From the IMG/VR virus record IMGVR_UViG_3300044821_000131, positions 1 to 64,000 of that record: DNA of 64,000 bases, one strand, 5' to 3'. The position numbers were made by a program, and so were the translations under genes. Every line of letters starts with the position of its first letter. The first letter of the stretch is position 1. The notes under the pieces were generated by a model, which saw only the letters and a list, made by a program, of their open reading frames with translations, searched no databases and had not been told where the DNA came from. Shown piece by piece: positions 31,904 through 48,355 of the stretch.

Positions 31904-33827
31904 ATGAAGTATTTTGTAAATGGACATTGCTTGAATCCAAAGGCAAACGATGACCTTGTTGTGCCACCGCTCTGTGCGTGCTGCCATAAACCACAGCATA
32001 AATGGAACACCATGCGCGTTCTCGGATGCGGTGGAGATTACGAGGACTGGCCGTGTAGACTGTGCCAGCCAGAAGAATATGAAAAAACTTTACGAGACGC
32101 CTATCTCTAGTCGGCACGATATAAAAGCTGAGCCGCAGCCAACTAATGATAGTCATGAACCAAATGACTCCTGCGGATAAACAGAACGCGCCAATAGAGC
32201 GATTTGATGCTCCACCGGGCTCGGCGGAGCGTGCTGGCCAGAATATGGAACGCGTTTTTAGGTGGTCTAAGGTCTGTGACTGTAAATCCACCGCGTCAAC
32301 GTGTGAAATTCGATGCAAGGGCGAATACGTCAACGCCACATGGACGATGACTGCGACATTTTACCCAATGCTTTCTTGCGATGAATGCGGCGCGACATGG
32401 AAACTCGACGCAGTTAACGTGGGAGTTGACCTACAGTCCCGCCGAAAGAAATAAAAATATGGTATTAACTCAATAGACCAACGACCAATGACACCAAACC
32501 AAGCCAGAGATGGACTGCTCGAAGCCATGCCGCTGACAACGGAAGCGGTAACGACGATAAAGAAATGGGGACGGGAATGCTCTGATGAGCGCAAGGCTGA
32601 CCCTGAAACCTACAATAAATGCCCGCGCTGCTATGGTCTCCACAGCATCCGTGGAAACTTCGACAACCTGTGTGATGGGTGCGTGAAAACAATCCTCGAA
32701 CACTTCCCAAACCATGAAAGCGTGCCGCACATCAAAGCAGCACTCGCTTAGATGTTTAACGTCCGCATGAGTCGCGGTAAATCGTATGGACATCACAAAA
32801 TTAAGCATTAAAGAATGTGCGGAACTTCAATCGCACGAAGGCAATTCCGAACTGGACAGGCGCGTAATGGAAGAACAGGACCGCATCGTTCGACTTTCCA
32901 TTGAGCAACTCACGGCGCTCTTGCTTGCCAGAAGTATTCGGCCAGATAAAACCGACATCAGGCTGAGAGCGGTAAGAGATGAACTCCTCACTCGCTTAGA
33001 TGTTTAACGTCCGCAGAATCCATGCGGCGATTTCAAAATGACATCCAAAATTGCAACTGAACCGTTCAAGCACGGGAACAACCCGCATTGGCTTCATGCG
33101 GTGGTTCGGCGACTGGTTGCATGTCTGCACGTTCACCGCTGGGAAGAAACGCTTTGGAACGCATGGGGCATAGACGTGGAGCAACGCTGCCGCTGCGGTC
33201 AATACCGGCATCACCTGTTTGAGCATCGTCGCGGTTTCTGTCAAGAACCAAACTGGCAACTTGGAAAACATCCCAACCGATACATGGCAAAATGAACACT
33301 GATAATAGTCGAAAATATGAAAACGAAAATAAGATATTCGGATATGAATGGTCGGACATCCAGCGAGCGCAGCAAGGCGGAAGGCTGGCGCAGCCAGTCC
33401 GAACCGGCAACCTAAACGCATCGGTGCAATGCTTCCGATGTCACAAATACTTTCGGCTGCCGCAAACGATGGAAACCGACCCGTGGCCGGTGCAATGCCT
33501 TCACTGCGGCTATATGCACACGTCGCATGACGGAGAATCGGCTATGTGGCCGAAATGGGGCGATGATAACAAATGGCATACAGTGGCCTAACGCCGTGCG
33601 TGAGCCATCCCGGATTCACGACACACAACAATCAAAAACCTGAACGAATAAAGTGCAGCGGCCAACCGGGATTGGCTCGACGCACTTGTTAGGCAGCACG
33701 GTTTATGAAAACAAAACCAATGATAACGGAAACAGTGACACTCTCTTTTGAGGTGAAGCTCAACTACCAAAACGATGAAGGCCGGGCATGGCTCGTAAAA
33801 TCGCTGAAGCGTGATGCTCGGAGATAA
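31904..33827 (+). CDS. Small cassette-like ORFs (31904-32110, 32146-32454, 32488-32751, 32786-33007, 33038-33295, 33292-33591, 33705-33827)
   Basis: Short, often Cys-rich ORFs separated by attC sites or remnants; 33705 read directly (MKTKPMITET...DARR*). Confidence 0.55.
32741..33015 (+). repeat. 27-bp direct repeat cactcgcttagatgtttaacgtccgca (32741-32767, 32989-33015)
   Basis: Exact match; each copy contains an attC core GTTTAAC and they flank ORF 32786-33007. Confidence 0.9.
33002..33110 (-). other. attC site
   Basis: Minus strand: GCCGAAC-CACCG-CAT[G]AAGC-CA[A]TGCGG...CCGCA-TG-GATTCTG-CGGAC-GTTAAAC. Confidence 0.75.
33586..33694 (-). other. attC site (canonical geometry)
   Basis: Minus strand: R'' GCCTAAC, 5 bp, L'' CGT[C]GAGC, CA[A]TCCCGG...CCGGGA-TG, L' GCTCACG, 6 bp, R' GTTAGGC. 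Confidence 0.9.
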
Positions 33828-39262: not shown

Positions 39263-39787
39263 ATGAAGATACATCTTTTGGTTGGCCAGCGAAAAGAGAG
39301 CTATGCTGGCGAGTTTGCTCCTGAAGTTTTGGAAGCCATAGACGAATTCGGTAATTGCGAAAATGCCGGCGAATGGCTGCAGGGTAAGATGAAGGAGTAC
39401 CGCGTTGACGCTTCTTTTGAAGCACTAGTCATAGTTACATTGGAAGTTCCTACACTTAAAATTTTGGAACGTTTACGTCCGAATAATGAACCTATTGTCG
39501 CCGAGGTGGTAGACACAGATTTATTGACCCTATATCTAAAAGATTCAGACGGTATTTGGAAATCACACAGCTACGAAACGTTATCCGATTTGGCCGGGGA
39601 GTTTGCCAAACGTAACATAAAAATCGGCAATGACGTGAAGATCGGCAATTTCGTGAAGATCGGCAATGACGTGACGATCGGCAATCGCGTGGCGATTGGC
39701 AATGACGTGATGATCGGCAATCGCGTGACGATCATTGATAACACATGTATACCTCCGGAGCTTATCATTCAAAAAAGACTAAGCTGA
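39263..39787 (+). CDS. Chimeric gene: unrelated N-terminus plus hexapeptide module (paralog 3, 6 repeats, no C-terminal domain)
   Basis: LYLKDSDGIWKSHSYETLSDLA block begins mid-gene; 18-bp units at 39620-39727; ends at a broken attC. Confidence 0.75.
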   Translation: MKIHLLVGQRKESYAGEFAPEVLEAIDEFGNCENAGEWLQGKMKEYRVDASFEALVIVTLEVPTLKILERLRPNNEPIVAEVVDTDLLTLYLKDSDGIWKSHSYETLSDLAGEFAKRNIKIGNDVKIGNFVKIGNDVTIGNRVAIGNDVMIGNRVTIIDNTCIPPELIIQKRLS

Positions 39788-39896
39788 GACATCGGCACGG
39801 TCGAGAAATGACGGATACATTTGAAATCGCAACCAAACTAAAATCTATGGCCTATGGAAAGAGTAGTGCCGATTGTTCTCCAACACCGTGTTCGGC
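39781..39896 (-). other. attC site lacking its R' box
   Basis: aagctgagacatcggcac...gtgccgattgttctccaacaccgtGTTCGGC; arms nearly identical to the 42442-42552 site. Confidence 0.75.
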
Positions 39897-40062
39897 GGAG
39901 CCGTCTTGGACGGCCTTCGTCGCGCGAATGAAAAAGGAAGCTCCAACGTTGGTCCCGGATGAAAATGACGACAAGTGGAAAAATTTGCATGCTGTTTATA
40001 TCATGGGCTACGCTGCTTGCCTCGATACCATGAGAGCAGAATTGGACGTACAGATCGACTGA
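39808..40062 (+). CDS. Small ORF starting inside the attC at 39781
   Basis: MTDTFEIATK...DCSPTPCSAEPSW; DCSPTPCS is encoded by the attC arm. Confidence 0.55.
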   Translation: MTDTFEIATKLKSMAYGKSSADCSPTPCSAEPSWTAFVARMKKEAPTLVPDENDDKWKNLHAVYIMGYAACLDTMRAELDVQID

Positions 40063-40064
40063 CT

Positions 40065-40673
40065 ATGACTTTTGCAACCTTTGATACAGCGACCACTGGA
40101 AAGATTAATTGGAAACAGCCGCTGTCTTGGCATGGACAGCCACGTATTGTCTCCACAGGTGCGGTTCTGTTCGACGATGTCGGACGAGAGCTCGCCAGCT
40201 ATTATTCCCTGATCAGACCGGAGGGGTTTCTTATTCCTTCCGATGCCACCAAGGTTCACGGCATCACCACAGAGAAGGCGGAGCAGTATGGAGTCAATTA
40301 CAACATCGCCATGACTTCGGTGATCTCAATGCTCAACTTGGCGGATTATATTCTGATCTTCAATGAAGCGTTCGATCGCAACATGGTTAATATCGAGGCG
40401 TTGATGCGCAGTAATGCGAATGGATACTTGGAGCGTAATCGTTCTCGTATCCGGTGTATGATGCAGGTTATGACCGCGCGTTGTAAGCTAGCTCATCCCT
40501 ACGACACCGGTGACTACAAGGGGCCCAGTTTGGATGAGGCGTGGCAATACACTTTCGGTTTACCACGAGATGTATCTAAAGTGCATAACGCTGGGGTCGA
40601 TGCGCGTGAGACCGGATTGATAGCTTTGGAACTGATACGTAGAAATGACTGGAATATCAACGACGCAACTTAA
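40065..40673 (+). CDS. DEDDh 3'-5' exonuclease-like protein (ExoI Glu replaced by Ala)
   Basis: FDTATTG, FNEAFD, PSLDEA, HNAGVDA. Confidence 0.75.
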   Translation: MTFATFDTATTGKINWKQPLSWHGQPRIVSTGAVLFDDVGRELASYYSLIRPEGFLIPSDATKVHGITTEKAEQYGVNYNIAMTSVISMLNLADYILIFNEAFDRNMVNIEALMRSNANGYLERNRSRIRCMMQVMTARCKLAHPYDTGDYKGPSLDEAWQYTFGLPRDVSKVHNAGVDARETGLIALELIRRNDWNINDAT

Positions 40674-40679
40674 ACACAC

Positions 40680-41162
40680 ATGAAAGAATTACATCCTGAC
40701 GATCCCCGACTTAAGATAAAAATGAATCGATTGGCCAACACCAAGAATCAGCACCAAGGTATACACAAAAAAGTTTTGTGTGTTTGCTCGGCCGGGCTGC
40801 TCCGATCGCCGACACTGGCCTGGGTTTTATCGAATCCTCCATGGAACTGCAACACCCGCGCTTGTGGTGCTGAACCCGAGTACGCATTGATTCCATTAGA
40901 CTTGGCTCTTGTCGAATGGGCTGATGAAATCGTTTGTGCTGAACAGGAGCACGTGGACGCTGCAAAGGCGTTCGTGAAGCATTGCTCGGATGCAGACAAA
41001 CGGATTTTCAATCTGGATCTACCCGATTATCACAGCACGCGCTCTACCAGTCTGGTCCATCTTATTAACGAGCGTTTGGACGCGGTTAAATTTGAAGGTA
41101 CGGTACCGACAGATCTGTCGTCCACTAAGCGTCGGGATTTATCGTCATCGTCAATTGTCTGA
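40680..41162 (+). CDS. Low-molecular-weight protein-tyrosine-phosphatase-like protein
   Basis: N-terminal VLCVCSAGLLRSPT (CX5RS), WADEIVC, LDLPD. Confidence 0.82.
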   Translation: MKELHPDDPRLKIKMNRLANTKNQHQGIHKKVLCVCSAGLLRSPTLAWVLSNPPWNCNTRACGAEPEYALIPLDLALVEWADEIVCAEQEHVDAAKAFVKHCSDADKRIFNLDLPDYHSTRSTSLVHLINERLDAVKFEGTVPTDLSSTKRRDLSSSSIV

Positions 41163-41207
41163 ACTTGGAATGAGGATAATTTTTGGAGCCGACGGCTGCA
41201 ATTCCGT

Positions 41208-43357
41208 ATGAGCAATCCGCGTGATCCCCTTACACCTGAACAAATCAAGCACTGGCGTGACATGCTTGTCGGTATGTTCGGTCCTTGGGCCTTCATAATG
41301 CCAGAGGAGGACATCCAGCGTATGAGGGAGCATTTACAAAGTGATTTGGATTCACATGAAATCAATGACTCAAAAGAATAAACGGAAACGGTTGGTGTGA
41401 CTTGTTATGCCACGAGAACACTCAATGTCGTGCGAATGGCCAGAGGGTTGTAGCTGTGGAGCATCAGCGTGGAATCGATTGGAGCGTGAGCGTGACTGGT
41501 ATCGCTGTCGCGTAAAACTGTTGGAACAGCACAAGTCAATGCTCCGAGAGCCAGAACTAACGCTGGTATGTGATATCATGGCAAACGGCCAACTAATGCC
41601 CGACCCAGACGGGAAACGATATGGGCCTAACGCAGACTTGTCAGGCATATCGATAACAAAACTGACATAAAACATATGACTGAAACTCCACAAACCAAAA
41701 AAACTCTGCTGCCGAAATACGAAGACGGAAGCGGATATAGGATCGAAAGAGAACTGTGTGTCTTCTGCCACAAACCGCTGCTCGACTCATTCCACTTTGC
41801 CAGCGATGACGGTAAGCAACACTGGCACACATACTGCGCAAACAGAAAAGGCGTAACGTCCCGGATGAGCCGCCCGCGATAGGCGACTCACGAACACCAA
41901 AAGATTTATGATCAAAAAGAAAGCGTCAACGCGGGTTGGCTCCATCGGGCGGGTTATGCCTCAGTTGGTGATATGCGACCATCATGGGCATGACTACTGC
42001 GAGGGATGCCAACATAACGAACCCCACAAAGCAAACAGTGAGGACGACGGCGAACTCTGCACATGCGGCGGAGTCTGTGGGGCAAACGGGCCAAACTTCA
42101 ACGTGCGCTGCCTGCGACATAACGCCTCAAGCTGAGGCACGTCGGACTAAAGACTTTATGAAACCTGTGAAACCAAAAATCCGTAGCGATAAAAACAAAC
42201 CGTCCAACCGACGTTGCCTCCGGCGCGGTGTTAGGCGACACGATTGGATAAACGGCCCCGATATGATTCCGAAGCCTGTAAAAAAGGCGATCAAAGAATG
42301 GCGGGCCATCACAAGTCCAATGGAGAAAATCGGATTCATCCTGCACGCTTTCGACCCGACAATACAGTTCCGCTGTCCCGACAGTAACCGAGTGTTTGAT
42401 ATGTCAATAAGTGCCGTCAAACGCATAAATGCCGCCTTGTCGCCTAACGCCTCAAGCTGAGACATCGGCGACCTGCGATGTCCAGCAACCCAAAACCTTA
42501 TGCTCAAAACTGAAAGCGCCAATACCGATTGTTCTCCAGCGCCGGGTTCGGGTGCTGGCTTGGATAACTGAATGGGTCGAAGCAATCTGGAAGGCGTTTC
42601 GACCGCCAAAACGGAAGCGGCTGGAACTGCGGCTCTGCACATGGACTGCCGCAGACAAGCTGATTCGGGAAGGTGGCGGCGCTTGGACGGTAGCCGCCGA
42701 AGATGACCACAACATGGTGCTTGGGTGTGTGTGGTTGGAACGCCTGGAACAATATCCCGACTTCTCGAAGCAGCAGTCGAACGGTGAAGTCAGCGATGGC
42801 GGGACGCTGACTTCCGAATTGAAATCCAAACGCGAACCCGCCATTCGCTGAATTGTTATGGCACTAATACACGAAGAAACTGAACACGAGCTTGGAGCGA
42901 AACTGATGGTATCGGAACGCCAAGAAGGTGAAACCCGCGCCCCGTGGAAAATCATCACGCTCGACGCAGACCGATTCGAGAATCTAACACCAACGGAACT
43001 CCGAAAGCTCGGAAAGTGGCTCATACACCAAGGGAGGCGCATCGGAAGTGAATACAAGTCCAACGGTGCGTTGAAGGCCAAGAGCCATAACGAAAAGCTG
43101 ATCGACAGCGGAAGGAAATTATGAGCTTTAAAAACGGCGGATATAACAACGGGCTTGGTCGGCCAAAGGCGAAGAAGCTGTTCGCTCCGGCGCGTTGTTC
43201 TACGGCGTGGTTGAGCGTGGAATCCCGTTGGCCAGTCAAGGGTGAACTCGAAACCAAAAGATGCCTGACAATCCTAGACGCGGTAATAGAAGGAAAACGC
43301 GCCCTCCAATGTGGGGCGTGGCGCGTAACAATAACTCAGTGCAACGGAGCGCCGTAG
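41208..43357 (+). CDS. Small cassette ORFs (41208-41381, 41407-41670, 41676-41882, 41908-42135, 42158-42460, up to 42429-42851, 42858-43124, 43121-43357)
   Basis: One ORF per inter-attC segment; no function recognised. Confidence 0.6.
41851..41959 (-). other. attC site
   Basis: Plus strand GCGTAAC-gtcccg-gatgagccgcccgcg...cgcggg[t]tggctc[c]atc-gggcgg-GTTATGC. Confidence 0.82.
42117..42236 (-). other. attC site
   Basis: Minus strand GCCTAAC-ACCGC-GCC[G]GAGG-CA[A]CGTCGG...CCGACG-TG-CCTCAGC-TTGAGGC-GTTATGT. Confidence 0.88.
42442..42552 (-). other. attC site
   Basis: Minus strand CCCGAAC-CCGGC-GCT[G]GAGA-ACAATCGG...CCGATG-TCTCAGC-TTGAGGC-GTTAGGC. Confidence 0.85.
42776..42861 (-). other. attC site with a short deletion next to R''
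   Basis: Plus strand GTCGAAC-ggtga-agtcagcgatggcggg...cccgcca[t]tcgctgaatt-GTTATGG. Confidence 0.75.
43085..43203 (-). other. attC site
   Basis: Minus strand GTAGAAC-AACGC-GCC[G]GAGC-GA[A]CAGC...GCTG-TC-GATCAGC-TTTTC-GTTATGG. Confidence 0.82.
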
Positions 43358-43405
43358 AACAGTTAATTAAACCAACGTTGGTCGTTTAACTCATACGAAA
43401 GCCGA

Positions 43406-43434
43406 TTGCCAAACGGGGCCTCAGTAAGTAGTAT
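43406..43434 (+). promoter_or_regulatory. Sigma70-like promoter for the RNAP-fragment genes
   Basis: TTGCCA-N17-TAGTAT, 6 nt before ATG 43441. Confidence 0.6.
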
Positions 43435-43440
43435 TCAAAA

Positions 43441-44985
43441 ATGACCGACGACGTAGCCGCACCCCCGGGAGTGGAAATTACAGCTTGGGATGACTTTCCC
43501 AAGAAACGCCAGCAGATTCTCACTGGCGCTAAAACTGCCCTGCAAGAATCATTTCCCCAATCCTATGGCGGGGTGCGGCTTGAACTACACGACCTCGATT
43601 ACGACAATCCCAAGGAATTCACATTGTCGGAACAGAAGGACGCCCTGATGAAGAACCAGTTTCTCCATCACAAACTCAAGGGTACGTTAAAATTATTCGA
43701 TGAGAAAACCGGTGCGTTGCTGGATCAGAAAACTCAGACGCTCATGCGAGTTCCTTACCTTACCGAGCGTGGTACATTTCTACATAATGGTAACGAGATC
43801 ACCACCAACAGCCAGGCTCGGCTCATGCCGGGCATCTATACGCGGCGTAAGAATTCTGGTGAAATTGAGTCTCAGGTGAACGCCAAGCGTGGATCGGGAT
43901 CATCCTTCCGTGTACGTCTCGAACCCGAGTCCGGTTTGTTTAAGGTCGACATCGGTCAGAGTAGTCTGCGGCTTTATTCGTTGTTGAAAGATATTGGAGT
44001 GTCCGATCAGCAGATTGAGAAGACTTGGGGACCAGAACTGTTGAAGAAGAATCAGGACTCCTACGATGCCAGGGTGTTCGAGAAGGCTTACGATCGATTG
44101 GTGCGGCGTCCCGATCCGAAGGCCACGCGCGAGCAGAAGGTAGAGGCAATCAAGCAGGCTTTGGACAATACGCAGGTGGATCGGTCGGTGGTCATGAGGA
44201 CATTGCCGAATCTGTTCGCCACCAAGTTCTCCTCGATGTTGGCATTCGATCCTACCATGCCTCGGCCGCAGAGCGAGAAGAAGGAATTCAATCACGACGA
44301 TTGCCTGATGCTGGCGGAGCTGTTGAATCAGAAGTTTCATGCTGGCATTCCGTTGGATGCCCCGACCTCAGAGATCGTAGCCATGGTGATGGGTGAAATA
44401 CAGAAGCTCATGCCGTCGGTGAATGAGCAGATGCTGGCACAGACTGTAGGGCAACAGCAGAAAGAGGCGCGATCGAAACAAGGTTATCTGATGTTGAATT
44501 TCGAACCGGAAGACGCCATGAGGTTTTCCAAGTGGTCAAGGCAGAATATCCCGGATTCGAAACTGGGTGCGTCCGGACGTGAAGACACCCCGCATATCAC
44601 TTTGCGTTGGGGTATCAACACGGGTGATATTGGGCACCTGAAATCATTCTTCTCAGAACAGTCCCCAGTCCAAGCCACGCTCGGCGCTCTGACTCGATTT
44701 CCTGGCGTCGACGACGGAAACCAAGATGCACTAGTGGCGCCGGTAGAGTCCGAATCCATTCACAAGCTACACCATGCTGTCGTATCGACGTTTCATTCTC
44801 ATCTCGGACCCGTCAAGTTCAATACCTACCGGCCACATGTTACTCTAGCCTATTTAAGGCGTGGCGAGATGCCGGAATTGGAAGGTAACAAGGAGTTTCA
44901 TGGCCAGACATTCCAGTTGAAGAAGGTGGTGTATTCCAATCCTCGCACCAGCTCGTATATTGACATTCCGCTGGGTACAAATTAG
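43441..44985 (+). CDS. RNA polymerase beta subunit N-terminal fragment fused to a 2H phosphoesterase domain
   Basis: VPYLTERGTFLHNGNEITTNSQARLMPG matches RpoB IPLMTxxGTFIINGxERVVVSQLxRSPG; C-terminal PHITL (44593) and PHVTL (44836). Confidence 0.82.
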   Translation: MTDDVAAPPGVEITAWDDFPKKRQQILTGAKTALQESFPQSYGGVRLELHDLDYDNPKEFTLSEQKDALMKNQFLHHKLKGTLKLFDEKTGALLDQKTQTLMRVPYLTERGTFLHNGNEITTNSQARLMPGIYTRRKNSGEIESQVNAKRGSGSSFRVRLEPESGLFKVDIGQSSLRLYSLLKDIGVSDQQIEKTWGPELLKKNQDSYDARVFEKAYDRLVRRPDPKATREQKVEAIKQALDNTQVDRSVVMRTLPNLFATKFSSMLAFDPTMPRPQSEKKEFNHDDCLMLAELLNQKFHAGIPLDAPTSEIVAMVMGEIQKLMPSVNEQMLAQTVGQQQKEARSKQGYLMLNFEPEDAMRFSKWSRQNIPDSKLGASGREDTPHITLRWGINTGDIGHLKSFFSEQSPVQATLGALTRFPGVDDGNQDALVAPVESESIHKLHHAVVSTFHSHLGPVKFNTYRPHVTLAYLRRGEMPELEGNKEFHGQTFQLKKVVYSNPRTSSYIDIPLGTN

Positions 44986-44994
44986 TATTCGGGC

Positions 44995-45711
44995 ATGCCT
45001 AGTCATAGCAAAGCGCAGCAACGGGCGTTCGGAATGGCCGCCGCTCTCCAAGAAGGTAAACTTTCTCCCAGCAAGGTGTCTCCCAGTGTACGCCGCATTG
45101 CCCGGGATGTATCTCATACGGATGTGCGTCATTTCGCCACTACCAAGCACACTGGCCTTCCTGAGCATGTTGCCAAGCACGCTTCATATCTGAAGCCAAT
45201 GACGGCCGGCACGGCTGTAGGGGATTTTGGCAGACTTGAAGGCAACCCCAATACTTGGAACATGCCGATGCCGCGCTATAACCAAGCTCCTCCAGCGTGG
45301 GCACCCGCGGAGAAGCCCCTGACATTCATGAGCAGTGTCGGGCAGATGGGCAAAGGCTTATATCGTATGGGTATGGGTGGTGCATCCGCGGCTACGATTG
45401 GTCAAAATGGATCTCCTGGCGTGTTGGAGAACACGTTGGGCAATGCCGTACATGGAGTTGGCGATGTATGGTCGGGACAGGGCGCGTGGGGAAAAGTGCC
45501 TGGGTACATCCGGAAGCCTCTGGCACCGATTGCCGGGCCTTGGTATGGTGCTATGAACACCCCCGGGCAGTTCAGTGGTCCCTACGGCAGGTTCTTGGAC
45601 AACTCCGGTCAGGATCGTGCCATGGCTGCTGCTCCTTATACGTGGGCACAGCATAGTTGGCGCGATATGGTGAATGGCTGGAATCAATTCATGAACAATA
45701 AAATGCAGTAA
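44995..45711 (+). CDS. DUF3008-like N-terminus plus Gly/Met/Trp-rich C-terminus
   Basis: MPSHSKAQQRAFGMAAA...VRHFATTKHTGLPEHV resembles the DUF3008 pattern MPAKSKAQQ...FASTKxKGLP. Confidence 0.55.
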   Translation: MPSHSKAQQRAFGMAAALQEGKLSPSKVSPSVRRIARDVSHTDVRHFATTKHTGLPEHVAKHASYLKPMTAGTAVGDFGRLEGNPNTWNMPMPRYNQAPPAWAPAEKPLTFMSSVGQMGKGLYRMGMGGASAATIGQNGSPGVLENTLGNAVHGVGDVWSGQGAWGKVPGYIRKPLAPIAGPWYGAMNTPGQFSGPYGRFLDNSGQDRAMAAAPYTWAQHSWRDMVNGWNQFMNNKMQ

Positions 45712-47163
45712 ATGCTCACTTACGAAAAGATTTTCGCGCAGGCTAAAAAAGCTTTCGTCGAATCCAAATCTGCTACTGCCGAACCGGCTCAGCCCACAGA
45801 GGATACCGTTCCGGTCAATCCTGACGCGATCTTGGCTATCACCAGCAAGTTGTTAGCTGTGACTAGAGGTGAGGCGGATCCGGACGAACGTGATAGCCTT
45901 CAATTTAAAAGAGTTCACACTCCCGATAAACTGTTCGCCGAACGCATTAAGATGGATGCCCATAAACTGCGTAAGATCGCGATGCGTCGCGTTTCGCGTG
46001 TCCGCAATCTATCACCTATCGGTGTGGCGCATTTCGATCCTTACACGGGAGGATTGATCGTTGGGCATCCGTTATCCAGTCCTTTGGAAGAGACGAACCC
46101 GTTATCGCTTACGGAGCAGGCGAGACGCGTGACGCAGATGGGACCTGGTGGTATTCCTTCCTCGGATTCGATCACGGAAGAGGCACAATCTGTGTCTCCT
46201 TCGATATTCGGTTTCTTGTCAGCGATCGAAGGGCCGGAATGCTTTTCAGATGACACAGAGGTGTTCACTTATAACGGGTGGAAGTTTTGGAGTAGCATTA
46301 CAAATTCGGATCGTCTGGCCTGTCGTGATGAACACGGGCAAATGTTTTTCTCGGCCCCTAGTCGCCTAATAGCTGCACCTTATACTGGACCTATGGTCCA
46401 AGCTGACGCTCGGATGTTTCATTTAAAGGTTACGCCGAATCACAGGTTACTTGTCGCTAAGCACATGAGAAAATCACAAGTTCCCACGACTTGGTTTAAA
46501 ATTTTTGCCGGTGATTTTTCTGATCATAATGTTTTGCGATTCGACACCGGCAGCCTTCCATATTCTGGAAATTCTGTTTTAACATGGTCTCTACCCGATT
46601 ATGCTCTTGATAAGTTCATTCCGGAATACTTGTTCGATGCACCAATTTCTGCCCGACAGAAGTTGTTTGAAGCCCTACTTTTGGGAGATGGTCGGATTAA
46701 CAAAAACCACACCAATTTTACCAGCAGCAGCAAACAATTGGCTACTGATTTTGAACGTTTGGCCGTAGGCTTAGGACACACCACCAATTTTAGAAAATAT
46801 TTCGACAAGCGACCCCATGTACAAGCTTGGACTTATGAGATTAGTATTTTGAAGTTGCGCGAGCGCGTGGCGGCTAGAAAACCCAAGTCTGGTGTTGGCG
46901 GGCTGTTTTCGATAGTCGATTATTCTGGTATTGTGTATTGTGCCACGGTTCCCGGCGGCCTGTTGCTGACTCGACGTGGCGTATCTACCGGTGTATGGTC
47001 AGGCAATAGTGAACGCATCGGTGTAGATACGCGTCTCGCTTGGGGCGCTAACGTTGGCTCAGACGGAAAAATTTATCAGAAACTCTTGAATCGCAGGACT
47101 GGTCAGCATCAGTATGTGTCACCGGACGATCTCGTCGGTCGCACGGTTGGTATCCCTGAATAG
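45712..47163 (+). CDS. RNA polymerase beta subunit middle fragment, intein-containing
   Basis: DERDSLQFKRV (cf DDIDHLGNRR), LEETNPLSLTEQARRVTQMGPGGI (cf [24 protein letters not shown]), FGFLSAIEGPE-SERIG (cf YGRICPIETPEGPNIG). Confidence 0.88.
   Translation: MLTYEKIFAQAKKAFVESKSATAEPAQPTEDTVPVNPDAILAITSKLLAVTRGEADPDERDSLQFKRVHTPDKLFAERIKMDAHKLRKIAMRRVSRVRNLSPIGVAHFDPYTGGLIVGHPLSSPLEETNPLSLTEQARRVTQMGPGGIPSSDSITEEAQSVSPSIFGFLSAIEGPECFSDDTEVFTYNGWKFWSSITNSDRLACRDEHGQMFFSAPSRLIAAPYTGPMVQADARMFHLKVTPNHRLLVAKHMRKSQVPTTWFKIFAGDFSDHNVLRFDTGSLPYSGNSVLTWSLPDYALDKFIPEYLFDAPISARQKLFEALLLGDGRINKNHTNFTSSSKQLATDFERLAVGLGHTTNFRKYFDKRPHVQAWTYEISILKLRERVAARKPKSGVGGLFSIVDYSGIVYCATVPGGLLLTRRGVSTGVWSGNSERIGVDTRLAWGANVGSDGKIYQKLLNRRTGQHQYVSPDDLVGRTVGIPE
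46240..47007 (+). mobile_element. Intein (256 aa) with partly deleted LAGLIDADG domain
   Basis: Starts CFSDDTEV, VTPNHRL, only one ALLLGDG motif, ends VYCATVPGGLLLTRRG...WSGN, +1 Ser. Confidence 0.88.
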
Positions 47164-47192
47164 CACTATTTCTGACGGAACACTTAACAGTC

Positions 47193-47222
47193 ACGCGCAG
47201 TAATCCCTTACTGCGCGTTTTT
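47193..47222 (+). terminator. Intrinsic terminator hairpin, copy 1
   Basis: acgcgcagtaa-tccc-ttactgcgcgt-tttt; identical at 51424. Confidence 0.8.
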
Positions 47223-47229
47223 GCATTTT

Positions 47230-47901
47230 ATGAACCTATTATATCTAAAAGATTCAGACGGTAATTGGCGATCACATAGCTACGAAACGTTATCCGATTT
47301 GGCCGGGGAGTTTGCCAAACGTAACATAAAAATCGGCAATCGCGTGGCGATCGGCAATTACGTGACGCTCGGCAATTACGTGACGATCGGCAGTGACGTG
47401 ACGATCGGCAATTACGTGACGATCGGCAGTGACGTGACGATCGGCAATTACGTGACGATCGGCAATCGCGTGGCGATCGGCAATTACGTGACGATCGGCT
47501 ATGGCGTGACGATCGGCTATGGCGTGACGATCGGCAATCGCGTGAAGATCGGCAATGACGTAAAGATCGGCAATGACGTGACGATCGGCGATGACGTGGA
47601 GATCGGCGATGACGTGATGATCGGCAATTACGTGAGGATCGGCAATTACGTGGTTATTCCCAAAGCTGCGAACATCCAACTCCAATACGACCTGGTCACC
47701 ATCAACAACTTGGGATCCCGGAACGCGGCCTTATCTGCTGTTAAAATCAAGGATATCATCCATGTCGCGACTGGGTGCTTCAGTGGCACGATTGATGAGT
47801 TTGAGAAGAGGGTGAAGGAAGTGCATGAAGAGAGTGAGCATGGGATGCGTTACGGTCTGGTTATTGAAGTTATTCGTAAATGGTTTTCGGTACAACGGTA
47901 A
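47230..47901 (+). CDS. Hexapeptide-repeat protein, paralog 4 (18 repeats)
   Basis: 18 x 18-bp units at 47329-47652; shared N- and C-terminal blocks. Confidence 0.88.
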   Translation: MNLLYLKDSDGNWRSHSYETLSDLAGEFAKRNIKIGNRVAIGNYVTLGNYVTIGSDVTIGNYVTIGSDVTIGNYVTIGNRVAIGNYVTIGYGVTIGYGVTIGNRVKIGNDVKIGNDVTIGDDVEIGDDVMIGNYVRIGNYVVIPKAANIQLQYDLVTINNLGSRNAALSAVKIKDIIHVATGCFSGTIDEFEKRVKEVHEESEHGMRYGLVIEVIRKWFSVQR

Positions 47902-47929
47902 ACAAAAACAAACAACTGAAAGGAAACAT

Positions 47930-48355
47930 ATGAGTCTATTACAAGCATTATTCTGGCCGTGGCGTTTCGTCTCGGAGGTCATTGATACCCATCCAACCGC
48001 CGGACAGATACGTCAGGATCTGCAGCAGAATCGTCCGATAGTCGTATCCAATAACACCGGTGTGGCTGTGGGACTACGCCTCGACGGCACGGACAAAGTC
48101 TCACCGCTGGAGGACGTAATCACGCGCAAGGTTGGAAGTCCCGAGGAGCTGCCTCTGGCCTTGGCCTTCGGTGAAGGTGTTGTGTCCGGGTATGGTCTGG
48201 CGGTGAAACGTGCAATCAATCTTCGACGCTCGTCTCTTGCCGAGGATAATAAGTTGCGCCGAGCCGCCTTAGCCGCAGATGCAGCGGCGAGCGAACCGGA
48301 GCCGGCGTCGGAAGCGTTCGTTGGATCAGAATTGTTGCCGGCCTCTGCTGTCTAG
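47930..48355 (+). CDS. Hypothetical protein
   Basis: ATG after an A-rich leader; precedes the AAA operon. Confidence 0.55.
   Translation: MSLLQALFWPWRFVSEVIDTHPTAGQIRQDLQQNRPIVVSNNTGVAVGLRLDGTDKVSPLEDVITRKVGSPEELPLALAFGEGVVSGYGLAVKRAINLRRSSLAEDNKLRRAALAADAAASEPEPASEAFVGSELLPASAV

What the first reader, a model, noticed from the sequence alone, without database searches (positions are those of the whole stretch)
41404..43376. Integron-type attC cassette array in a phage, with every gene inverted relative to the attC sites
Seen: five consecutive 86-120 bp attC sites, one small ORF between each. Extrahelical bases and spacer lengths place the canonical top strand on the minus strand, while all ORFs are on plus. 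The GTT box left of each ORF matches the AAC box right of it (6/7, 7/7, 5/7, 7/7, 7/7; 32/35) better than the boxes within a site match (23/35). Known: that pattern is what IntI-mediated assembly via circular cassettes leaves. No tyrosine recombinase is seen in the window. Inference: the phage uses a host or distal IntI to shuffle a pool of reverse-oriented, phage-like mini-genes.
Basis: partly seen in the sequence, partly recalled or inferred. Interest (0 to 1): 0.92.

Follow-up and report, generated by a model that had tools for sequence, protein, structure and literature searches.

The report
Inverted integron cassette array in phage
A 204-kb phage, probably of Verrucomicrobiota, carries genuine integron attC sites without an integrase. 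Unusually, its small genes lie on the recombining (bottom) strand and often start inside the attC hairpin loop, and one such cassette occurs in five different sequence contexts.

Summary
Inside 41404-43376 there are four intact attC sites of 109-120 nt: 41851-41959, 42117-42236, 42442-42552 and 43085-43203. There are also one truncated and three collapsed sites, which together delimit seven small + strand ORFs. Two more sites lie outside the given coordinates, at 33586-33694 and 39768-39896.

The sites have exact attC geometry: extrahelical bases at positions 16 and 23/24, a 6-bp stem between them, and a 5-6 nt spacer. A covariance model built only from attCs next to intI genes in Verrucomicrobiota MAGs scores them at 29-73 bits. 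They covary strongly.

Three independent lines put the recombinogenic bottom strand on +, the coding strand:
- the position of the extrahelical bases;
- the polarity of the same attC family relative to intI in bacteria;
- which attC travels with ORF3.

The ORF3 cassette occurs in five contexts, bounded at the AAC triplets wherever the flanking site is intact.

No IntI was found in 88% of the contig, so this is a CALIN (a cluster of attC sites lacking an integrase), presumably served by a host IntI. Phage CALINs are already published (Qi 2023). What looks new is the inverted architecture, with starts in the attC loop and stops often in the next attC. I rate it a new variant of a known kind.

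The parts
41386..41410 (+). Junction A: a truncated attC. Only the 3' half is present (part of L'', a GACTT spacer, and R'' GTTATGC at 41404-41410). It is the left end of the array, and the ATG of ORF1 lies inside the R'' box.
   Evidence: Sequence reading; weak covariance-model hit 41293-41410, 7.1 bits; repeat D4, shared with junction F.
41407..41670 (+). ORF1 (87 aa), with no database match. It is cassette 1, flanked by GTTATGC on the left and GCCTAAC on the right (6/7 complementary).
41625..41646 (+). Junction B: a collapsed attC consisting of R' GCCTAAC, 8 nt, then a mutated R'' GTCAGGC. There are no L boxes.
   Evidence: covariance-model hit of 11.7 bits.
41676..41882 (+). ORF2 (68 aa), Cys/His-rich, with only a weak PHD-like zinc-finger match. 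Its last 8 codons and its stop are encoded by the 5' arm of attC C.
41851..41959 (+). attC C (109 nt), bottom strand on +. R' is GCGTAAC and R'' is GTTATGC; the spacer is 6 nt and the extrahelical bases are C17 and T24. The loop holds an A-rich leader and the ATG of ORF3.
   Evidence: Scanner 13/13 stem pairs; covariance model 50.8 bits, E about 1e-9; folds end to end as ssDNA.
41908..42135 (+). ORF3 (75 aa), Cys/His-rich. The cassette runs from 41857 to 42122. Its stop codon, the TGA of GCTGAG, lies 12 nt inside the next cassette.
   Evidence: Ten of 13 variable positions in the cassette body are + frame third codon positions, and the antisense ORF is interrupted in the relatives. The cassette occurs in five contexts.
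42117..42236 (+). attC D (120 nt), bottom strand on +. R' is ACATAAC and R'' is GTTAGGC; the extrahelical bases are C16 and T23. The loop holds the ATG of ORF4.
   Evidence: Scanner 13/13; covariance model 73.1 bits, E about 1e-14, against 8.2 bits on the reverse strand.
42158..42460 (+). ORF4 (100 aa). It starts in the loop of attC D, and its stop is the TGA in the L' box of attC E. The flanking boxes, GTTAGGC and GCCTAAC, match 7/7.
   Evidence: (inverted repeat I14).
42442..42552 (+). attC E (111 nt), bottom strand on +, of the three-extrahelical-base type (C16, T20, T24). The ATG in its loop opens only a 23-codon ORF.
   Evidence: Scanner 13/13, all Watson-Crick; covariance model 53.5 bits.
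42552..42851 (+). ORF5 (about 99 aa if it starts at the GTG in R''). The start is uncertain, because the frame is open from 42429.
   Evidence: no family match.
42831..42861 (+). Junction F: a collapsed attC consisting of R' CGCGAAC, 17 nt, then R'' GTTATGG. The ATG of ORF6 lies inside R''.
   Evidence: Covariance-model hit 42776-42862, 18.8 bits, E 0.004. CGCGAAC pairs 6/7 with the R'' of site E, and GTTATGG pairs 7/7 with CCATAAC of site G (read).
42858..43124 (+). ORF6 (88 aa). It reads through the 5' arm of attC G and ends in an ATGA overlap with ORF7 inside the loop.
43085..43203 (+). attC G (119 nt), bottom strand on +. R' is CCATAAC and R'' is GTTCTAC; the extrahelical bases are C16 and T23. 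The loop holds the ATG of ORF7.
   Evidence: Scanner 12/13; covariance model 29.4 bits, E about 1e-4.
43121..43357 (+). ORF7 (78 aa). Its stop codon, TAG, lies inside the terminal R' half-site.
   Evidence: the 12/12 inverted repeat 43196-43207 / 43350-43361 (I16).
43354..43360 (+). Junction H: the terminal R' half-site GTAGAAC, 7/7 complementary to the R'' of site G. It is the right end of the array, where it meets the phage backbone.
33586..33694 (+). A solitary textbook attC (109 nt) outside the given coordinates. R' is GCCTAAC, R'' is GTTAGGC, and the extrahelical bases are G16 and T23. It is 95% identical to an attC in the unrelated phage contig L008. Weak decayed sites lie at 33002-33110 and 32114-32234.
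   Evidence: Scanner 13/13; covariance model 58.2 bits on + against 24.1 on -; blastn.
39768..39896 (+). A decayed attC that has lost the AAC of its R' box. Its arms resemble those of site E. The loop holds an ATG at 39809 that opens an 84-codon ORF running to 40062.
   Evidence: Covariance model 24.4 bits, E 2e-4; sequence.

Best explanation
The region is a CALIN: a cluster of genuine integron attC sites with no integrase nearby. It sits in the accessory-gene region of a 204-kb jumbo phage.

**Shown**
- The attC sites belong to the family used by chromosomal integrons in MAGs labelled mostly Verrucomicrobiota, so the host is probably in that phylum.
- The cassettes are built in reverse of the textbook design. 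The gene lies on the attC bottom strand, the strand IntI recombines. On the + strand a cassette reads as its own attC (minus the first six bases of R'), then the gene body, then the RYYYAA of the next junction.
- The start codon and an A-rich leader often sit in the terminal loop of the gene's own attC hairpin. The reading frame runs out through the AA|C crossover point, and the stop is often supplied by the conserved GCTGAG of the next attC.
- Cassettes are single mobile units exchanged between unrelated phages.

**Inferred**
- A host IntI, induced during infection, acts in trans on single-stranded phage DNA to excise, insert and swap cassettes by attC x attC recombination.
- Only reversed cassettes persist, because only they are co-directional with the phage's one-way transcription.
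- This arrangement would also put the recombinogenic strand on the lagging-strand template, which is the recombination-prone configuration.
For: **Geometry and significance**
- The sites match the published attC rules, as shown. There are 5 strict hits against 0.33 expected. The R100 aadA1 attC serves as a positive control.

**attC model**
- Model R1 was built from 58 attCs in intI-adjacent bacterial arrays. It hits the window sites at 29-73 bits on + only, and also hits the R100 aadA1 attC at 43.8 bits.

**Covariation**
- In 37 phage-borne sites, 93.8% of cells pair. Fourteen of the 15 L-box/stem pairs show compensatory changes. No shuffle of 500 reached the observed values, and slid controls pair at 31-40%.

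**The same family next to intI**
- They hold 426 strict sites in arrays of uniform polarity, and at least 15 loci also carry a full-length IntI homologue. In the six loci I read in detail, my bottom strand is the strand of the intI coding sense, as in canonical integrons.
- The IntI homologues carry the integron-specific insert.

**Polarity and mobility**
- The ORF3 cassette occurs in five contexts. Its left-hand attC travels with it and its right-hand attC does not.
- R''/R' complementarity is 88/100 within a cassette and 70/124 within a site.

**Gene strand**
- ORF3 shows selection in the + frame.
- In phage contig L211, N6_N4 and Dam methyltransferase cassettes lie on the bottom strand and start inside the attC (Pfam E 3e-23 and 4e-30).
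- The longer ORF is on the bottom strand in 20/25 phage cassettes, against 50/293 bacterial cassettes (p=1.4e-10).
- An ATG in the loop opens an ORF of at least 45 codons at 22/31 phage sites, against 57/399 bacterial sites.

**Other points**
- No IntI was found in 88% of the contig, nor in the available parts of L008 and L009.
- The contig is a real phage, with DNA polymerase, large terminase, primase and a UvsX-like recombinase.
- The lagging-strand argument combines the positive GC skew along + with PMC13108822.
Against: - There is no direct evidence of recombination in the phage: no circles and no read-level variants.
- Three of the seven internal junctions are collapsed and could not bind IntI, so part of the array is decaying.
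- L009 and L216 share 10 nt beyond the AAC although the rest of the right-hand attC differs. This points to some exchange inside attC sites rather than only at AA|C.
- Codon-usage models could not confirm the coding strand for ORFs other than ORF3. Cassette ORFs score like non-coding sequence under both the phage-trained and the bacterial-cassette-trained models.
- No phage cassette body has a homologue in the sampled bacterial arrays, so phage-host exchange is not shown.
- The first extrahelical base is C in most sites, not the usual G.
- The last 25 kb of the contig was not examined.
Confidence: 0.75

Rival explanations
1. Fossil capture. One or more pieces of a host chromosomal integron were picked up by illegitimate or homologous recombination. 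They now sit inertly in the phage, and the cassette pattern reflects past IntI action in bacteria only.
For: Three internal junctions are collapsed, one is truncated, and the R' of site 39768 has decayed. No IntI was found in the phage. Qi et al. also suggest capture by off-target recombination.
Against: - Host arrays of this family are about 83% canonical, with the longer ORF on the top strand in 243 of 293 cassettes, whereas phage arrays are 80% inverted. The phage arrays are therefore not a random sample of host arrays.
- The related phages L008 and L009 share backbone flanks, yet only the ORF3 cassette is common to their arrays.
- The ORF3 cassette has five different pairs of neighbours; every context with identifiable flanking genes (window, L008, L009) is phage.
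- No phage cassette body was found in the bacterial arrays sampled.
Confidence: 0.15
2. The phage supplies its own recombinase, either an IntI in the unexamined last 25 kb of the contig or a different enzyme that recognises these hairpins. In that case the array is part of a complete phage-borne integron-like system.
For: Twelve percent of the contig was not seen. Qi et al. report complete integrons in some temperate phages. In IMG/VR, 294 contigs encode IntI relatives.
Against: - No IntI-profile hit and no Phage_integrase label in contig positions 1-179,260.
- None of the five array-bearing viral contigs is among the 80 best IntI hits.
- No attI-like platform or integrase is adjacent to any of the five phage arrays.
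Confidence: 0.07
3. The repeats are structured regulatory or processing elements, such as terminators, RNase III sites or PeSL-like promoter-stem-loop modules. On this view they spread by homologous recombination, and their likeness to attC is coincidental.
For: - The hairpins lie on the mRNA-sense strand and present the start codon in the loop.
- ERF and exonuclease recombination genes sit next to the arrays in L008 and L009, and a homologous exonuclease gene sits next to the L212 array.
- One junction shares 10 nt beyond the AAC.
Against: - The geometry is exactly that of attC.
- A model trained on intI-adjacent attCs hits the sites, and the same model hits a class 1 attC.
- The same family lies beside intI genes.
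- Neither promoter-like nor terminator-like motifs are in excess, and there is no Rfam match.
- The outer R-box positions pair with the neighbouring site rather than within a site. Nothing in a purely RNA-level role predicts this.
Confidence: 0.03

Closest known systems
CALINs (clusters of attC sites lacking an integrase) in virulent and temperate phages: Qi, Rajabal, Ghaly, Tetu and Gillings 2023, Front Microbiol (PMC9892861)
   Same: These are attC arrays with no nearby IntI, inside phage genomes. The cassettes include DNA methyltransferases, as in the related phage array L211. In that study, five of six tested phage attC sites were recombined by IntI1.
   Different: In the one published example I re-examined, Tetrasphaera phage TJE1, two scanner-detected attC-like sites follow the genes, with their bottom strand opposite the coding strand. 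That is the canonical design. In the present arrays the genes lie on the bottom strand, often start inside the attC loop, and often stop in the next attC. The present case also documents one cassette in five contexts and ties the sites to a specific host integron family.
Sedentary chromosomal integrons of Verrucomicrobiota MAGs
   Same: They use the same attC family, with the consensus GCCTAAC / GCT-GAGCCA ... TGGCTC-C-GGC / GTTAGGC. Geometry and size classes (about 99-130 nt) are the same, and array polarity is uniform.
   Different: The bacterial arrays lie next to an IntI gene. The median cassette is 464 bp, against about 270-350 bp in the phage arrays. About 83% of bacterial cassettes carry the gene on the top strand. 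No cassette bodies are shared with the phage arrays.
Reverse-oriented cassettes in chromosomal integrons, such as toxin-antitoxin cassettes with their own promoter in Vibrio
   Same: The gene is on the strand opposite to the usual one relative to the attC, and it is expressed independently of the Pc promoter.
   Different: In bacteria these are a minority scattered among canonical cassettes. Here reversal is the rule for whole arrays, and the translation start is embedded in the attC loop. That TA cassettes carry their own promoter is stated in PMC13108822. That they are often reversed is from my own knowledge and was not checked here.
PeSL mobile regulatory cassettes of T4-type phages
   Same: These are repeated stem-loop modules that flank small accessory ORFs in hyperplastic phage regions and mediate modular shuffling.
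   Different: PeSLs are early promoter plus stem-loop units that recombine by homology. The present sites show no promoter or terminator signal, have attC geometry, and exchange at the AA|C of an R box.

Membership tests
Integron attC recombination site | Inverse core sites: R' RYYYAAC at the 5' end of the bottom strand and R'' GTTRRRY at the 3' end, with the AAC/GTT triplets conserved | tested here: met
   AAC and GTT are present in all four intact sites and in 33586. The outer positions are relaxed: only GCCTAAC (sites E and 33586) and GTTAGGC (sites D and 33586) fit the strict consensus.
Integron attC recombination site | Extrahelical bases on the arm opposite the AAC triplet in the bottom strand. 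The first is at position 16 and the last is a conserved T at 23/24, with a 6-bp stem between them and an optional base at position 20. | tested here: met
   Positions are 16/23 in D, G and 33586, 16/20/24 in E, and 17/24 in C, which has a 6-nt spacer. T23/24 is invariant in the 16 sites of the window, L008 and L009. The first base is mostly C rather than G, which is a deviation in identity but not in position.
Integron attC recombination site | Unpaired central spacer of about 5-6 nt per arm, a paired L box, a variable terminal structure, and a total length of 57-141 bp | tested here: met
   The 3' spacer is 5-6 nt and the 5' spacer is 5-7 nt. Lengths are 109-120 nt in the window and 59-136 nt in the relatives for intact scanner-confirmed sites; one model hit in L008 (6455-6656) spans 202 nt. 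The stem is 96.7% paired, with compensatory changes in 14 of 15 pairs.
Integron attC recombination site | Recognised by an attC covariance model | tested here: met
   IntegronFinder's own model was not available. A model built here from 58 attCs in intI-adjacent arrays scores the window sites at 73.1, 58.2, 53.5, 50.8 and 29.4 bits on the + strand, and scores the R100 aadA1 attC at 43.8 bits.
Integron attC recombination site | Cassette signature: the R'' and the RYYYAA of the next junction belong to one cassette, and exchange occurs at AA|C of the bottom strand | tested here: met
   Complementarity is 88/100 within cassettes against 70/124 within sites. The ORF3 cassette is bounded by AAC triplets in four of four intact left junctions and five of five right junctions.
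Integron attC recombination site | Recombined by an integron integrase as a folded single strand | not testable with these tools
   This needs a suicide-conjugation or excision assay. Qi et al. showed it for other phage attCs.
Complete integron | An intI gene, an attI site and a Pc promoter adjacent to the array | tested here: not met
   There is no IntI-profile hit in the window, in L008 or L009, or in contig positions 1-179,260. The array is flanked by phage genes.
CALIN (cluster of attC sites lacking an integrase) | At least two attC sites in the same orientation with no integron integrase nearby | tested here: met
   Four intact co-oriented sites lie within 1.35 kb, and there is no IntI within at least 40 kb on either side.
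Canonical integron cassette | A promoterless ORF on the top strand, followed by its attC | tested here: not met
   The ORFs lie on the bottom strand and are preceded by their own attC.
PeSL-type promoter-stem-loop cassettes of T4-type phages | An early sigma-70-type promoter plus a terminator-like stem-loop at each junction | tested here: not met
   There are 3 promoter-like sites against 2.0 expected and 4 terminator-like sites against 3.7 expected. None lies at the repeats on the + strand.

The most novel reading that the evidence does not exclude
Phages of Verrucomicrobiota maintain their own pool of reversed integron cassettes. Each cassette carries its translation start in the loop of its attC and borrows its stop from the next attC. 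The cassettes circulate among unrelated phages by hijacking host IntI.

The reversal would not be accidental. It lets genes stay co-directional with phage transcription and replication while the recombinogenic bottom strand sits on the lagging-strand (and non-template) strand. That is the configuration which makes Vibrio arrays hyper-recombinogenic. The result would be a fast-shuffling phage store of counter-defence genes (methyltransferases and small Cys/His-rich proteins), mirroring bacterial integrons as stores of defence genes.
Probability: 0.3. Interest if true: 0.85.

Novelty: new variant of a known kind. Interest (0 to 1): 0.66.

Why it matters
Integrons are usually treated as bacterial devices in which promoterless genes sit upstream of their attC and are read from a platform promoter. 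This case shows the same recombination sites used in a lytic-type jumbo phage and in at least four smaller viral contigs (three with phage genes beside the array), with the gene-attC relationship reversed and the coding sequence threaded through the recombination hairpin.

It gives a concrete, testable example of cassette traffic between unrelated phages, and it points to host integron integrases (from MAGs labelled Verrucomicrobiota) as candidate recombinases.

If the cassettes prove to be counter-defence genes, phages would be using the integron system against hosts that use it to store defence genes. The case also warns annotators. Here attC sites lie inside ORFs, and the A-poor antisense strand carries long spurious ORFs.

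Tried and rejected
**No match found**
- Rfam scan of 40500-44500 at E up to 10: nothing.
- Nucleotide search of 40001-48000 against 50,697 phage records: no match.
- Pfam and PHROGs on the seven cassette ORFs: no significant family.
- Strict RYYYAAC/GTTRRRY regular expressions: not enriched. The outer box positions are too relaxed for this test.
- Homologues of phage cassette bodies in 857 kb of bacterial arrays: blastn and tblastn found only attC-length matches.

**Uninformative tests**
- MFE folding z-scores of single sites ranged from -0.3 to -2.5. The long loops dilute the signal.
- Codon-usage log-odds models were trained on phage core genes and on bacterial top-strand cassette ORFs. Neither discriminates the coding strand in the cassettes. 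Even ORF3, which is confirmed as coding, scores as non-coding, so I dropped this approach.

**Hypotheses not supported**
- That long attCs mark reversed cassettes in bacteria: not supported.
- Promoter or terminator signals at the junctions: no excess.
- That reversal is general to phage CALINs: rejected, because phage TJE1 is canonical.
- That the long minus-strand ORFs (41370-41771, 42127-42642, 42452-43081) are the real cassette genes: rejected. They cross cassette boundaries. The minus ORF inside the ORF3 cassette has a stop in the relatives. The minus strand is A-poor (AT skew 0.19), which depletes stop codons.

**Search for an integrase elsewhere**
- I walked 53-179 kb of the contig and found none.
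- One look-up was wasted on a gene whose called start differs from mine.
Full report
**1. What is there**

The window is the first 64 kb of a 204,257-bp IMG/VR contig. All its genes are on the + strand. It encodes a DNA polymerase, a large terminase, a primase, a helicase and a UvsX-like recombinase, and the contig carries pieces of a multisubunit RNA polymerase. It is a jumbo phage.

Between 41.4 and 43.4 kb lie seven tightly packed small + strand ORFs with no family match. Their junctions carry a DNA repeat of 109-120 nt. The repeat falls in different reading frames in different copies, so it is conserved as nucleic acid and not as protein.

**2. Are the repeats attC sites?**

I took the published rules from Nivina et al. 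2016 (PMC5027507). The bottom strand reads 5'-RYYYAAC ... GTTRRRY-3'. The extrahelical bases lie on the arm opposite the AAC, the first at position 16 and a conserved T at position 23 or 24. [quoted passage not shown] I coded this geometry as a scanner.

- The scanner finds five strict sites in 64 kb: 33586-33694, 41851-41959, 42117-42236, 42442-42552 and 43085-43203. All have the + strand as bottom strand. Sixty dinucleotide shuffles gave a mean of 0.33 and a maximum of 2.
- It recovers the aadA1 attC of plasmid R100 with the same layout, on the strand opposite aadA1.
- Site 33586 is a textbook case: GCCTAAC/GTTAGGC with G16 and T23.
- Sites D and G have C16/T23, site E has C16/T20/T24, and site C has a 6-nt spacer with C17/T24.

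**3. An independent model**

I scanned one genome per species with a 21-nt pattern from the 3' arm. Of the 80 stretches listed, 62 are labelled Verrucomicrobiota; most come from soil and peat MAGs.

- These loci hold 426 strict sites in arrays of uniform polarity.
- At least 15 loci also carry a full-length IntI homologue, 43-53% identical to IntI1 and bearing the integron-specific insert.
- In the six loci I read in detail, the strand my scanner calls 'bottom' is the strand of the intI coding sense, with the array upstream of intI. This is the canonical layout, so it validates the strand call for this family.

I then built a covariance model from 58 attCs of these intI-adjacent arrays only.

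- It scores the window sites at 73.1, 58.2, 53.5, 50.8 and 29.4 bits on the + strand. The reverse strand scores far lower.
- It finds a decayed sixth site at 39768-39896 (24.4 bits).
- It weakly marks junctions F, B and A.
- It also hits the class 1 aadA1 attC at 43.8 bits.

Across 37 phage-borne sites, 93.8% of cells pair and 14 of the 15 L-box/stem pairs show compensatory changes. Slid controls pair at 31-40%.

**4. Map of the array**

Four sites are intact (C, D, E and G). Junction A is a truncated 3' half. Junctions B and F are collapsed sites in which the R' and R'' boxes are only 8-17 nt apart. Junction H is a terminal R' half-site.

Together these junctions delimit seven cassettes. For each cassette, the GTT box to its left matches the AAC box to its right: 44/49 positions overall, against 34/49 for the two boxes of a single site. 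Across five phage arrays the same-cassette figure is 88/100 variable positions, against 70/124 for same-site pairs, which is close to random pairing (p<5e-5).

**5. Polarity and mobility from relatives**

ORF3 with its left-hand attC occurs at 91-99% identity in several other places:
- two other viral contigs, L008 and L009;
- two metagenome contigs identical to L008 (L214 and L215);
- a distinct metagenome contig, L216;
- an ENA contig, L217.

That makes five distinct contexts with different neighbours.

- The shared DNA begins at the AAC of the left site in all four cases where that site is intact.
- It ends at the CATAAC of the right site in all five cases.
- The flanks are unrelated.

The attC to the left of the gene travels with it, which fits only the model in which + is the bottom strand. 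L008 and L009 share backbone genes on both sides of their arrays, but within the arrays they share only this cassette. Cassette order is therefore not fixed.

One anomaly remains. L009 and L216 share 10 nt after the AAC, although the rest of the right-hand attC differs.

**6. Which strand codes?**

- For ORF3, 10 of the 13 variable positions in the cassette body (downstream of the attC) are + frame third codon positions, and the antisense ORF has a stop in the relatives.
- In phage contig L211, which carries an SU10-type capsid gene, two cassettes encode Pfam-supported DNA methyltransferases on the bottom strand. Both start inside the attC.
- The longer ORF is on the bottom strand in 20 of 25 phage cassettes, against 50 of 293 bacterial cassettes (Fisher p=1.4e-10).
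- An ATG in the attC loop opens an ORF of at least 45 codons at 22 of 31 phage sites, against 57 of 399 bacterial sites.
- In six cases the stop falls exactly 12 nt past the next R' box, at the TGA of the conserved GCTGAG. The C-terminus of ORF3 therefore differs with its neighbour.

For ORFs 1, 2 and 4-7 the evidence is ORF tiling only. Codon models were uninformative. The long minus-strand ORFs cross cassette boundaries, and the A-poor minus strand explains them.

**7. Recombinase**

An IntI profile finds nothing in the window, L008 or L009, while it detects the control at E=8.5e-176. I walked the source contig out to 179,260 of 204,257 bp and found no IntI, no Phage_integrase label and no further attC site.

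In IMG/VR, 294 contigs encode IntI relatives, but none of the five array-bearing contigs is among the best 80. The array is therefore a CALIN. A host IntI acting in trans is the simplest source of recombinase, but that is an inference.

**8. Why reversed? (inference)**

In Vibrio, placing the attC bottom strand on the lagging-strand template greatly increases cassette excision, and natural chromosomal arrays avoid that arrangement (PMC13108822).

In this phage, GC skew is positive along + throughout the window. That suggests the parental + strand is the lagging-strand template. A gene that must be co-directional with phage transcription while its attC bottom strand lies on the lagging-strand template has to sit on the bottom strand. 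That is exactly the reversed design. I did not test this idea.

**9. Comparison with what is known**

Qi et al. 2023 (PMC9892861) already reported 17 CALINs in phages and showed that IntI1 recombines five of six phage attCs tested. 'An attC array in a phage' is therefore a new member of a known kind.

I re-examined their phage TJE1. My scanner finds two attC-like sites there, directly after orf2 and orf3, with the bottom strand opposite the genes. That is the canonical design. The Verrucomicrobial model R1 did not detect these two short sites, so this control rests on the scanner alone.

Reversal is therefore not general to phage CALINs and appears to be the new element here. The other new elements are the starts in the attC loop and stops in the next attC, the documented traffic of one cassette between phages, and the link to Verrucomicrobial integrons.

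PeSL-type cassettes and terminator or processing elements were considered and rejected.

**10. Verdict**

- Novelty: a new variant of a known kind.
- Interest: 0.66.

Noticed in passing
window 33586-33694, 39768-39896, and weak hits at 33002-33110 and 32114-32234: There are further attC sites outside the given coordinates, all with + as the bottom strand. One is a textbook site that is 95% identical to an attC in the unrelated phage contig L008, although the flanking genes differ. One is decayed. The 31.9-33.8 kb block shows the same high AT skew (0.20) as the main array (0.19).
   Followed up: partly
window 43441-44985: This 514-aa protein has a C-terminal 2H/LigT-type phosphoesterase domain (Pfam 2_5_RNA_ligase2, E 1.8e-9) and a weak match to the anti-CBASS protein Acb1 (E 7.7e-4). 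It may be a counter-defence nuclease for cyclic nucleotides.
   Followed up: no
window 45712-47163; contig positions about 92.6-94.5 kb and 117-119 kb (L222, L224): Pieces of a multisubunit RNA polymerase are scattered along the contig (Rpb2_3, Rpb2_6, Rpb1_5). The piece at 45712-47163 seems to contain an intein-like insertion. I read this from the sequence; it matched no Pfam intein or Hint family at E<=0.001.
   Followed up: no
L009:10216-10232 compared with L216:1508-1524: The ten bases after the AAC crossover point (ATACCAAGCT) are identical in two contexts of the ORF3 cassette, although the rest of the right-hand attC differs. This suggests mosaic attC sites, or exchange inside the site as well as at AA|C.
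   Followed up: partly
window 41370-41771, 42127-42642 and 42452-43081 (minus strand): Long antisense ORFs of 133-209 aa overlap the array and cross cassette boundaries. They are best explained by stop-codon depletion on the A-poor minus strand, and they could mislead gene callers.
   Followed up: yes
L008:434-1150 and L009:5914-6843: The small phages that share the ORF3 cassette encode pentapeptide-repeat proteins with a DUF5758 C-terminal domain. In L008 and L009 the arrays sit directly downstream of an ERF recombinase and DUF3799 exonuclease module; in L212 the array sits next to a homologous DUF3799 exonuclease gene.
   Followed up: no
IMG/VR loci L131-L210: A search found 294 IMG/VR contigs that encode relatives of integron integrases (48-58% identical to the Verrucomicrobial IntI for the best 80). 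I did not check whether these are true phages with complete integrons or chromosomal integrons mis-called as viral.
   Followed up: no
L217:618-790: The cassette after ORF3 in this ENA contig encodes a paralogue of ORF3, with the same Cys/His pattern. This points to a small family of Cys/His-rich cassette proteins. Several ORFs in window 32.1-33.6 kb also carry paired CxxC motifs.
   Followed up: no
window 39263-39787 and 47221-47901: Two hexapeptide-repeat (left-handed beta-helix) proteins are encoded here. The first ends at the TGA of the GCTGAG box of the decayed attC at 39768.
   Followed up: no
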